NCBI RefSeq assembly: GCF_000143415.4
Contig: NW_003314299.1
Span: forward strand, 1,552,559 to 1,616,558
Origin: Selaginella moellendorffii
Lineage: Eukaryota > Plantae > Lycopodiophyta
Direction of reading: 5' to 3'
DNA: 64,000 nucleotides
Shown: positions 43,246-44,850 of the stretch, piece after piece
How positions within the stretch are numbered: position 1 is the stretch's first letter
How the letters are laid out: each line of letters begins with the position of its first letter
Made by a program: the position numbers and the translations under genes
Notes under the pieces: model-generated
Databases searched by the model: none
What the model saw: only the letters and a program-made list of their open reading frames with translations
What the model was told of the DNA's origin: nothing

Positions 43246-44070
43246 TTGGTGAAGGTGAGGGCACCTTTGATTGTCTCTGAAGAGTGCTTGAATTTGGGAT
43301 TTTGATTTAGATCTAGCTTAGAGTTAAATCCTAGAGTTTTTGAATTTTATTATATGTTAGAATAATCAAATTGATAAAATTGACTAATACATTATATGTA
43401 TGTATGCACTATTTCAGACCTTATGAGAAGCATAAGATGTCAATTCAAAAACATTTATAAGCTATATAATTATAAGTATATACTGAAAGAACCTGAAATT
43501 GTATTTGAACCCGAAATCCCAAAATCACTAATTAATTATTTTTAATATATCTTATTTTTCTCCTCTAAACTAGCAGAGTTTTCCAATTTTGCACTAACTG
43601 CCATTGTATAGCTAGATACTCTAATAAGATAACATTATATTTTTGCTAATATTGTTATTAGTGCTCAAGATATTAGTTATACTAATATTTCTGGATTGAG
43701 CAGGATTGCCACAAATATCATTCTTTTATTTCTTGCAATGATAGTATTTGTATAAAAAGTAAGTAAAGAAAAGTATATAGTAGAGCTCCTTACTTTTTTC
43801 TTCTATCAATCATGTTAAACTAATATATAAATAAATATTTATGTCTTAATTCCTTTCCTTCTTATCACATGAAACTTTCTTAATATAGGCTTTATGAGCA
43901 CAACTAAAGCTTTGAAGAAGTACTTAGGATCTCGCCAAAATAGGTATTCTTAATTCATTCAGTCCATTGTGTTTGAATTTTTGGTACATGAAAACTGCTT
44001 ACATTCTGATATAAAATGGCTTGCTCTAGAGTGTTAGCAACCAGCAGTTTCGTAGCTAGATATATCATAG

Positions 44071-44850
44071 TTCTGTTCCAATGGCTCATACCAATGCTCT
44101 AATCTTCCAGGCTTCTTTCATTGCCTTCATTTCAAGTGTTGCAGTGGCACTAACTCCGTCCCCCGTCTCCCACTGCCTCCCCCTCCAGGAAAAGGATGCT
44201 TCCCAGGTAGAAATTCACATTGTTTTCCTATTTCCAAGCTATTATAGGAGGTGCAACTGTTCAGATGTATAATGGAGAAATTAAGTTCGTGAGGGAGCTT
44301 AATGTTAGACAAGGTTTAATACATAAATTTACAAATCTTGTCAGTGGGCAAGAATATCTATTCAGATGTGTATCCATTCGGCCACAAGGATGCCGATGCC
44401 ATCTCCAAGTTTTCCAAGTGCACAGCGCTTCAAACATGTTGGAACTCACTGCAGGCCACTGTCAATGGAAAGCTCGTGTACAAGAGAGCCGAGGACCTCA
44501 AGGTTGGAGAGTCTCTGTGGGAATTATCCCAAATCACTGGTAAGGAAAGCAAGAACTTGAAAAGCATATATACACTGGTGGATGTTTCTAACTACTCTCT
44601 GACTTTTCCAGAAATCTCAAAGGTTGAAAAGCTGGGCCTCTACAACCCACTCACACCCTCCGGCAGCATCATGGTGAACAATGTTCTAGCATCAGCTCAC
44701 AGTGACTGACTCCATACGCATACCAGGCCGTGAGTTCCCGCCATCTACAAGATCGTCGGCAAGGAAATCTACGCAAAGGATTGGCGAATTTGGAACGAAG
44801 AATGGAGGTAGCTTTGGAATTACTGGTCTTGTGCTGGCCTCCAAGGTGTA
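44071..44850 (+). pseudogene. Hedgehog/Hint (Hog) domain gene, disrupted
   Basis: Cys-rich exon and Pro linker FCSNGSYQCSNLPGFFHCLHFKCCSG...PPPPGKG, then CFP|GGATVQMYNGEIKFVREL, IYSDVYPFGHKD, LELTAGH, RAEDLKVGE and GLYNPLTPSGSIMVNNVLASAHSD*. Frameshifts lie between blocks. Confidence 0.85.

What the first reader, a model, noticed from the sequence alone, without database searches (positions are those of the whole stretch)
43690..44850. Hedgehog-type Hint (Hog) autoprocessing gene in a land plant, fused behind a Cys-rich, Pro-linked domain
Seen: all main Hint blocks in order, namely G|CFPG (catalytic Cys1 at 44197-44199), YS.V..F.H.D, LTxxH, A.DL.VG and GLYNPLT.SG.I.VN.VLAS. They are preceded by an exon encoding FCSNGSYQCSNLPGFFHCLHFKCCSG and a poly-Pro linker. 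A signal-peptide-like stretch (IATNIILLFLAMIVFV*) with a GTAAGT donor lies at ~43705-43765, and a second hydrophobic reading (MAHTNALIFQASFIAFISSVAVA) overlaps the Cys exon. Known: Hog domains self-cleave before the Cys and, in Hedgehog, attach a sterol to the released N-terminal domain; they occur sporadically in non-animal eukaryotes and are not a recognised feature of angiosperms. Inference: this lineage has, or had, a family of secreted Cys-rich peptides released and perhaps lipidated by Hint autoprocessing, a Hedgehog-like signalling or defence system. This copy has frameshifts and a probable TGG>TGA stop after ASAHSD.
Basis: partly seen in the sequence, partly recalled or inferred. Interest (0 to 1): 0.85.

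Follow-up and report, generated by a model that had tools for sequence, protein, structure and literature searches.

The report
Decayed spikemoss Hog gene copy
This stretch is a broken, non-coding relic (pseudogene) of a spikemoss gene for a secreted protein with a Hedgehog-type self-cleaving domain; the family was published in 2008 and has intact annotated sister genes, and the "cysteine-rich domain" comes from reading the signal-peptide exon in the wrong frame.

Summary
The Hint signal is real. The open piece 44320-44706 hits Pfam PF01079 (Hedgehog Hint module) at 40.1 bits, E 3.9e-10, above the curated cut-off.

It is not a working gene and not a new kind. The closest proteins are Selaginella moellendorffii RefSeq "warthog protein 4/6" (74% identity). 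The region is 96.5% identical and collinear with S. moellendorffii scaffold GL377593.1. DNA alignment to two intact paralogue loci shows the same four-exon, three-intron layout. It also shows at least eight frame-breaking deletions, a lost intron-2 acceptor and a premature TGA. Most of these lesions are shared with the GL377593.1 copy. Translation from the conserved ATG stops after 56 codons.

The "Cys-rich exon" is the +2 frame of the signal-peptide exon, and the same pseudo-peptide appears in the intact paralogues. The true N-terminus is a signal peptide plus a shortened proline-rich linker.

A second, older Hog relic lies at about 60210-59770 on the minus strand.

Hog genes in Selaginella and Physcomitrella were published by Bürglin in 2008. 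This scan found the family before on other pieces of this genome. Expression could not be tested.

The parts
44081..44206 (+). Exon 1 relic: start codon, signal peptide (MAHTNALIFQASFIAFISSVAVA), a much shortened Pro-rich linker and GKG|CFPG. It is 126 nt long, but 1 mod 3 is needed, so the ATG frame and the Cys1 frame differ.
   Evidence: Alignment A1 to intact loci L002/L003; deletions of 67, 27 and 3 nt; frames
44197..44199 (+). Codon of the catalytic Cys1 (TGC), preceded by Gly. It is out of frame with the ATG.
   Evidence: aligns with C72 of P0001, which aligns with Cys1 of Drosophila Hh-C
44207..44247 (+). Intron 1, GT..AG kept, shortened to 41 nt (57 nt in the intact paralogue)
44248..44313 (+). 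Exon 2 relic (GGATVQMYNGEIKFVRELNV...). A window-private 2-nt deletion after 44306 destroys the conserved GD of VGDKV.
44314..44341 (+). Remnant of intron 2. A 25-nt deletion after 44341, shared with L001, removed the polypyrimidine tract, the acceptor AG and the first 4 nt of exon 3.
44342..44539 (+). Exon 3 relic (GKNIYSDVYPFGHKD ... QVHSASNMLELTAGH ... VNGKLVYKRAEDLKVGESLWE). A 1-nt deletion after 44409 is shared with L001. A 14-nt deletion after 44459 is private and removes FVPVA. The TxxH block therefore lies in a different frame from its flanks.
   Evidence: Pfam hit
44540..44611 (+). Intron 3 (72 nt, GT..AG, same position as in the paralogues). It is open in frame, so it was read through in the Pfam-matching ORF.
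44612..44851 (+). Exon 4 relic: the end of Hint (EISKVEKLGLYNPLTPSGSIMVNNVLASAHSD) and a shattered C-terminal helical region. There is a premature TGA at 44707-44709. Deletions are 43 nt (after 44711), 8 nt (after 44732), 29 nt (after 44779) and 12 nt (after 44811). The original stop TAA is at 44849-44851.
59770..60210 (-). Second, older and more decayed Hog relic, covering parts of exons 2-4 only. It has no exon 1 and no Cys1, carries several lesions of its own, and keeps the original intron-2 acceptor.
   Evidence: tblastn E 4.9e-17; blastn 73% identity to 44342-44692; alignment A2

Best explanation
The locus is a unitary-looking pseudogene of the Selaginella Hog family (Hedgehog-type Hint plus a C-terminal helical region). 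It belongs to the 'warthog protein 4/6-like' lineage.

The ancestral gene encoded, in order:
- a signal peptide;
- a Pro-rich, probably hydroxyproline/O-glycosylated, linker;
- a Gly|Cys cleavage site;
- a Hint domain;
- a helical tail of about 80 residues.

By analogy with Hedgehog, such a precursor would enter the secretory pathway. Cys1 would attack the preceding peptide bond (N-to-S acyl shift, helped by TxxH). A nucleophile (a sterol, or water) activated by the His at the Asp46/Asp303 position would then release the short N-terminal peptide. That mechanism is inferred for the intact sisters and has never been tested.

This copy can no longer do any of it. A chain started at the conserved ATG ends after 56 codons. 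Cys1, the TxxH block and the C-terminal region lie in mutually different frames. One splice acceptor is gone. Most lesions predate the split from the second assembled copy (probably the other haplotype). That split has since accumulated private indels and substitutions at dN/dS of about 1. A second, older relic 15 kb away shows repeated birth and death of these genes at this place.
For: - Pfam Hint hit on the open piece.
- The best relatives in 1.84 billion proteins are S. moellendorffii Hog proteins, with P0001 (XP_024535844.1) at 74% identity.
- The spliced CDS of locus L002 translates exactly to P0001, which fixes the exon map.
- DNA alignment A1 shows the same three intron positions and lists the deletions. 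The frame-breaking ones are 2, 1, 14, 43, 8 and 29 nt, a net 97 nt in exon 1, and 25 nt over the intron-2 acceptor.
- Translation from the ATG through the paralogue splice sites stops in exon 2.
- Most lesions are shared with L001 (GL377593.1), an independently assembled copy that is 96.5% identical and collinear over 8 kb.
- dN/dS is 1.25 for window vs L001, 0.45 for window vs L002, and 0.21 between the intact paralogues.
- Nearly invariant family residues are lost in frame: G95/D96, H138, P227/R229 of P0001.
- The intact sister folds as Hint plus a helical tail (pLDDT 83.7). Its best PDB matches are Drosophila Hh-C 6TYY and 1AT0, with target TM 0.82 and 0.80.
Against: - Expression was not tested. 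A transcript, or a short peptide from the first 56 codons, cannot be excluded.
- dN/dS for window vs L001 rests on only 10 substitutions.
- Two window-private deletions (2 nt and 14 nt) happen to restore the frame after shared lesions. This leaves a 129-codon open stretch. It could hint at residual constraint, but it is expected by chance about one time in nine.
Confidence: 0.9

Rival explanations
1. It is an intact, functional Hog gene. On this view the apparent frameshifts are sequencing or assembly errors, or unusual introns.
For: - All Hint motifs are recognisable and Cys1 is kept.
- Introns 1 and 3 keep GT..AG.
- A 129-codon open stretch exists.
Against: - Lesions of 14, 25, 29 and 43 nt are not typical base-calling errors.
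- Most lesions recur in the separately assembled copy L001.
- No placement of GT..AG introns restores the missing conserved residues (FVPVA, EWFLDSIFDAVGATEYL, GYAAIDSFTN), because that DNA is simply absent.
Confidence: 0.02
2. It is a transcribed pseudogene with a secondary role. Examples would be a regulatory RNA against its intact sisters, or a source of a short secreted peptide (signal peptide plus about 33 residues) from the first 56 codons.
For: - The ATG, the signal-peptide coding part and about 120-85 nt of upstream similarity to the paralogue promoters/5' ends are kept.
- A GenBank ab initio model (EFJ23131.1, P0005) was called over part of the sister copy.
Against: - No RNA holder was found.
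- Neutral-looking divergence from L001, including private indels in the first exon.
- P0005 is a chimera of pseudogene pieces and downstream ORF with no Pfam support.
Confidence: 0.06
3. It is a foreign (contaminant or recently transferred) Hog gene from an alga, protist or animal.
For: Hog genes are patchily distributed among eukaryotes (PMC2362128).
Against: - It is embedded between plant genes: PPR, Prp31/Nop and Dof.
- It is collinear with a second S. moellendorffii scaffold.
- Its closest relatives are all Selaginella, then a clubmoss (Diphasiastrum) and a moss (Ceratodon).
- It has short plant-type introns shared with the paralogues.
Confidence: 0.01

Closest known systems
Selaginella moellendorffii 'warthog protein 4' XP_024535844.1 (P0001; locus L002, GL377566.1) and 'warthog protein 6' XP_024531687.1 (P0058; locus L003, GL377581.1)
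   Same: - Same signal peptide (MAHT.ALIF..SFIAF..SVAVA), Pro-rich linker, G|CFPG and order of Hint blocks.
- Same C-terminal tail and same three intron positions.
- 74% protein identity on the open piece and about 90% nucleotide identity in aligned codons.
   Different: - The window copy has lost most of the Pro-rich repeats.
- It carries at least eight frame-breaking deletions, lacks the intron-2 acceptor and has a premature TGA, so it cannot encode the protein.
pSm Hog / pSl Hog / pPp Hog of Bürglin 2008 (BMC Genomics 9:127, PMC2362128)
   Same: - Hog domains of Selaginella and Physcomitrella.
- The Cys of motif J is replaced (here ASAH; ASTH in the intact sister), as that paper describes for moss and red-algal Hogs.
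   Different: That paper reported one sequence per species. This locus is an additional, dead copy. I could not check which paralogue its pSm Hog corresponds to.
Drosophila Hedgehog C-terminal autoprocessing domain (PDB 1AT0; D46H mutant 6TYY)
   Same: - Hint fold, Cys1 and TxxH.
- The general-base position is occupied by His, as in 6TYY.
- The model of the intact sister matches with target TM 0.80-0.82.
   Different: - There is no Hedge signalling domain.
- The cargo of the intact sisters is a short Pro-rich peptide.
- The second Cys (C143) is replaced.
- The sterol-recognition function of the tail is unknown.
- The window copy is non-coding.
Selaginella Hog genes with a small four-Cys cargo ('indian hedgehog B protein' XP_002985754.2; P0006/P0061)
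   Same: Same genome and same Hog module (Pfam Hint 94.9 bits).
   Different: Only 54% identical to the window piece. Their real in-frame Cys peptide has no counterpart here, because the window's 'Cys-rich' reading is out of frame.

Membership tests
Hedgehog-type Hint module (Pfam PF01079) | Profile match above the curated gathering score | tested here: met
   40.1 bits vs 29.7, E 3.9e-10, profile positions 46-161 of 213, on window:44320-44706
Hog autoprocessing domain (functional member) | Gly|Cys cleavage site with Cys1 in frame with an upstream start or cargo | tested here: not met
   GKG|CFPG is present (TGC at 44197-44199). Exon 1 is 126 nt where 1 mod 3 is required, so the ATG frame reads ...LQEKDASQ across it.
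Hog autoprocessing domain (functional member) | TxxH block in frame with the rest of Hint | tested here: not met
   LELTAGH (44439-44459) lies between a 1-nt and a 14-nt deletion, so it is in another frame than its flanks.
Hog autoprocessing domain (functional member) | General base (Asp or His) at the Hh-C position 46 | tested here: met
   PFGHKD is kept (His codon 44383-44385). H113 of P0001 aligns with position 46 of 6TYY/1AT0.
Hog autoprocessing domain (functional member) | C-terminal region after Hint (SRR/ARR-like helical tail) | tested here: not met
   In the intact sister it forms six helices at residues 205-278. In the window it is cut by deletions of 43, 8, 29 and 12 nt and preceded by a TGA.
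Hog autoprocessing domain (functional member) | Continuous ORF after splicing | tested here: not met
   Translation from the ATG through the paralogue splice sites stops after 56 codons, and further stops follow.
Hog autoprocessing domain (functional member) | Self-cleavage or sterol transfer activity | not testable with these tools
   Needs biochemistry. It has not been reported for any plant Hog in the papers I could search.
Selaginella warthog-4/6-like (Pro-rich cargo) Hog lineage | Closest relatives, shared signal peptide and shared intron positions | tested here: met
   The Cys-rich letters are the ATG+2 frame of the signal-peptide exon, and they are reproduced in the intact paralogues.

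The most novel reading that the evidence does not exclude
The intact sisters of this relic (Selaginella warthog-4/6-like genes) may release a short secreted hydroxyproline-rich (AGP/extensin-like) peptide. That peptide could carry a sterol or other lipid added by Hog autoprocessing, which would be a plant counterpart of Hedgehog lipidation. On this reading the two relics in this window record rapid birth and death of such a family. Nothing in this window tests the idea; it concerns the family, not this dead copy.
Probability: 0.2. Interest if true: 0.55.

Novelty: already known. Interest (0 to 1): 0.1.

Why it matters
It matters little in itself. The result removes a false lead, namely a supposed Cys-rich Hedgehog-like ligand in an angiosperm. 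It shows that the locus is one more dead member of a lycophyte Hog family already in the literature and in RefSeq.

Its modest value is threefold:
- As an annotation note: two Hog pseudogenes, and a chimeric GenBank model on the sister scaffold.
- As evidence of gene turnover in the family.
- As a reminder that the function of plant Hog proteins (cleavage, adduct, role of the Pro-rich or Cys cargo) remains untested.

Tried and rejected
- **Reads on the locus.** There is no read evidence for expression or for the indels. A later local script only counted columns of that stored alignment.
- **RNA runs.** The look-up of sequencing runs (kind rna) gave three runs, none on record as RNA.
- **Organism identity by exact look-up.** The 805-aa PPR ORF is not in the collection. 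The organism therefore rests on 96.5% DNA identity to GL377593.1 and on the nearest proteins.
- **Locus of P0001.** The look-up of encoding contigs for P0001 found nothing. The GenBank twin P0056 gave the locus.
- **Other pieces.** Pfam on the other frame pieces (exon 1 frame, exon 2/TxxH frame, tail frames) gave no significant hit.
I considered a two-exon model using the stretch at 43705-43765. I rejected it because a stop precedes the donor, there is no Met, and there is no paralogue homology.
- **Frame-restoring deletions.** I considered that the private deletions signal selection. I rejected this as unsupported: chance is about 1/9, and conserved residues are lost.

Full report
**What is in the sequence**

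- GKG|CFPG, with TGC at 44197-44199;
- GGATVQMYNGEIKFVRELNV;
- GKNIYSDVYPFGHKD;
- QVHSASNMLELTAGH;
- VNGKLVYKRAEDLKVGESLWE;
- EISKVEKLGLYNPLTPSGSIMVNNVLASAHSD, followed by TGA (44707-44709).

These blocks lie in three different frames. The longest open piece, 44320-44706 (129 codons), matches Pfam PF01079 (Hedgehog Hint module) at 40.1 bits, E 3.9e-10. The gathering score is 29.7 bits. The Hint observation is therefore real and far beyond chance.

**Whose gene it is**

I ran a full HMMER scan of that piece against 1.84 billion representative proteins. It gave 55 hits at E < 1e-3. The nine best that I looked up by name are all Selaginella moellendorffii proteins. The top hit is P0001 (XP_024535844.1, 'warthog protein 4', 279 aa) at 74% identity. 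Its cluster holds XP_024531687.1, 'warthog protein 6'. The next named hits are from the clubmoss Diphasiastrum complanatum and the moss Ceratodon purpureus.

The GenBank model P0005 (EFJ23131.1) led to locus L001 (GCA_000143415.2, GL377593.1:261789-275184). L001 is 96.5% identical to window 43854-51761 and collinear with it: Hog relic, tRNA-Pro, then a Dof gene.

The window also carries PPR, Prp31/Nop and Dof genes. It is therefore S. moellendorffii nuclear DNA or a very close relative. L001 is most likely the other haplotype; from my own knowledge, the published assembly holds two haplotypes about 98.5% identical. Coding positions of the relic differ by 1.7% between the two copies.

**Gene model by comparison with intact paralogues**

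Loci L002 (GL377566.1) and L003 (GL377581.1) carry the intact genes. Splicing L002 at 5001-5223, 5281-5348, 5396-5612 and 5683-6014 gives a CDS that translates exactly to P0001. The DNA alignment A1, with its gap list, gives the map of the window copy:

| Part | Coordinates | State |
|---|---|---|
| Exon 1 | 44081-44206 | Broken |
| Intron 1 | 44207-44247 | 41 nt, GT..AG kept |
| Exon 2 | 44248-44313 | Broken |
| Intron 2 remnant | 44314-44341 | Acceptor lost |
| Exon 3 | about 44342-44539 | Broken |
| Intron 3 | 44540-44611 | 72 nt, GT..AG kept |
| Exon 4 | 44612-44851 | Broken |

Lesions relative to the intact genes:
- **Exon 1:** deletions of 67, 27 and 3 nt in the Pro-rich repeats. The exon is 126 nt where 1 mod 3 is needed, so the ATG and Cys1 are in different frames.
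- **Exon 2:** a 2-nt deletion after 44306, inside the conserved VGDKV.
- **Intron 2 / exon 3:** a 25-nt deletion after 44341 that removes the intron-2 acceptor and 4 nt of exon 3.
- **Exon 3:** a 1-nt deletion after 44409, and a 14-nt deletion after 44459 that removes FVPVA.
- **Exon 4:** deletions of 43 nt after 44711, 8 nt after 44732, 29 nt after 44779 and 12 nt after 44811.

It sits at the edge of the 43-nt deletion.

Following the ATG frame through the paralogue splice sites gives a stop after 56 codons, and more stops follow. Nearly invariant family residues (G95/D96, H138, P227/R229 in P0001 numbering) are lost or out of frame.

**Age and constraint**

These lesions are shared with L001:
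- the 67-nt, 3-nt, 25-nt, 1-nt, 43-nt, 8-nt and 12-nt deletions;
- part of the 29-nt deletion.

These are private to the window:
- the 27-nt, 2-nt and 14-nt deletions;
- the larger part of the 29-nt deletion.

L001 has private deletions of its own, and its exon 1 is also frameshifted, but differently (152 nt). The gene was therefore dead before the two copies diverged and has kept decaying.

Nei-Gojobori dN/dS:

| Comparison | dN/dS | Basis |
|---|---|---|
| Window vs L001 | 1.25 | only 10 differences |
| Window vs L002 | 0.45 | 202 codons, 9.7% nucleotide difference |
| L002 vs L003 (both intact) | 0.21 | 259 codons, 10 differences |

This pattern is what a pseudogene derived from a constrained family should show.

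**The supposed Cys-rich cargo**

The peptide FCSNGSYQCSNLPGFFHCLHFKCCSG is read in the frame that starts at ATG+2. It has no Met. The same frame of the intact paralogues gives nearly the same pseudo-peptide: NGSYQCSNLPDFFHCLRCKRCSG in L002 and NGSYQCSNLPHFFHCFRCKRCSG in L003. In L002 a stop stands just upstream of it. The annotated proteins read MAHTSALIFLTSFIAFAASVAVAQTPTPPPP... instead.

That is a signal peptide, followed by what is left of a (T/A)PPP-type linker.

The upstream hydrophobic stretch at 43705-43765 ends in a stop before its GTAAGT. It lies outside the region that is similar to the paralogue loci, which begins at 43962 for L002 and 43996 for L003.

From, the Selaginella family shows three cargo types after the signal peptide:
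- Pro-rich (P0001, P0058);
- almost none (P0003, P0008);
- a small four-Cys peptide (P0006, 'indian hedgehog B protein').

The window piece is 74% identical to the first type and 54% to the last.

**What the ancestral protein would do**

P0001 aligns by sequence with Sonic and Drosophila Hedgehog C-terminal domains:
- Cys72 aligns with Cys1.
- H113 (FGHKD) aligns with the general-base position 46. That position is His in the D46H structure 6TYY, which is the best Drosophila match.
- T135/H138 align with TxxH.
- ASTH stands where Hedgehog has ASCY, so the second Cys is replaced. Bürglin noted the same for moss and red-algal Hogs.

An AlphaFold2 model built on a 32-sequence alignment has mean pLDDT 83.7. 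It shows a Hint beta-core (residues 72-200, pLDDT about 96) followed by six helices (205-278). Foldseek ranks 6TYY and 1AT0 first (E 2e-11 and 3e-10, target TM 0.82 and 0.80), ahead of inteins, BIL and Vint domains.

The intact sisters are thus bona fide Hog proteins. Self-cleavage at G|C, with transfer to a sterol or to water, is the inferred mechanism and is untested. The window copy retains the codons for Cys1, the His and TxxH, but not in one frame.

**A second relic**

tblastn and blastn found another Hint-like stretch at about 60210-59770 on the minus strand. tblastn gave E 4.9e-17, and blastn gave 73% nucleotide identity to 44342-44692. It covers parts of exons 2-4 only and has its own deletions. 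It still has the original intron-2 acceptor, so it split off before the 25-nt deletion occurred in copy 1.

**Prior knowledge**

Bürglin (2008, PMC2362128) reported Hog domains in S. moellendorffii, S. lepidophylla and Physcomitrella patens. He described a conserved upstream region, and he noted their absence from Arabidopsis and other higher plants. The intact paralogues are in RefSeq.

Earlier notes of this scan on other pieces of this genome reached the same family and the same paper. I used them as leads and checked the species and the paper myself.

**Limits**

Expression and read-level confirmation could not be obtained. 

**Verdict**

The Hint observation is real, and the Cys-rich cargo is a misreading. 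The object is a decayed member of a known lycophyte gene family. Interest is low.

Noticed in passing
window 44887-44958 (-): A tRNA-Pro(CGG) gene lies 36 nt after the relic's stop codon. It is also present at the same place in L001 (6506-6577). A half-decayed remnant follows the intact paralogue in L002 (about 6085-6127), so the duplicated unit seems to have carried the tRNA gene.
   Followed up: partly
window 38244-43328: A 5.1-kb LTR retrotransposon sits about 750 nt upstream of the relic's ATG. It has 250-nt direct repeats at 38244-38493 and 43070-43319 (92% identical). It carries a reverse transcriptase (PF00078, E 1e-24, at 40407-40991) and a weak gag-protease hit. It is absent, cleanly, from the sister copy L001. 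Related repeats occur near L002 and L003.
   Followed up: partly
L001 6001-7396 (GL377593.1); window equivalent about 44370-45742: GenBank model EFJ23131.1 (P0005, 190 aa, 'hypothetical protein SELMODRAFT_415625') is a chimera. It joins out-of-frame and in-frame pieces of the Hog pseudogene to an unrelated downstream ORF, and it has no Pfam hit on record. It is probably an annotation artefact.
   Followed up: partly
window 44306 and 44459: Two window-private deletions (2 nt and 14 nt) each restore the frame after an older shared lesion. The older lesions are the loss of 7 nt at a cryptic CAG acceptor and a 1-nt deletion. The result is the 129-codon open stretch. This is probably coincidence (about 1 in 9).
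   Followed up: partly
window 2054-3172 (-), 3605-6019 (-), 48515-50065 (-): The neighbouring genes are ordinary plant genes: Prp31/Nop-domain protein, an 805-aa PPR protein in a single ORF, and a Dof zinc-finger transcription factor. The exact PPR sequence is not in the protein collection.
   Followed up: no
window 1534-1604 (-), 16224-16296 (-), about 1355-1454: There are two further tRNA genes, Gly(GCC) and Glu(CTC), and a run of 100 N (an assembly gap) starting near 1355.
   Followed up: no
window 24000-30000 and 32000-38000: Long AT-rich stretches (GC 0.28-0.33 against 0.42-0.59 elsewhere) with no ORF of 150 aa or more. They were not examined.
   Followed up: no
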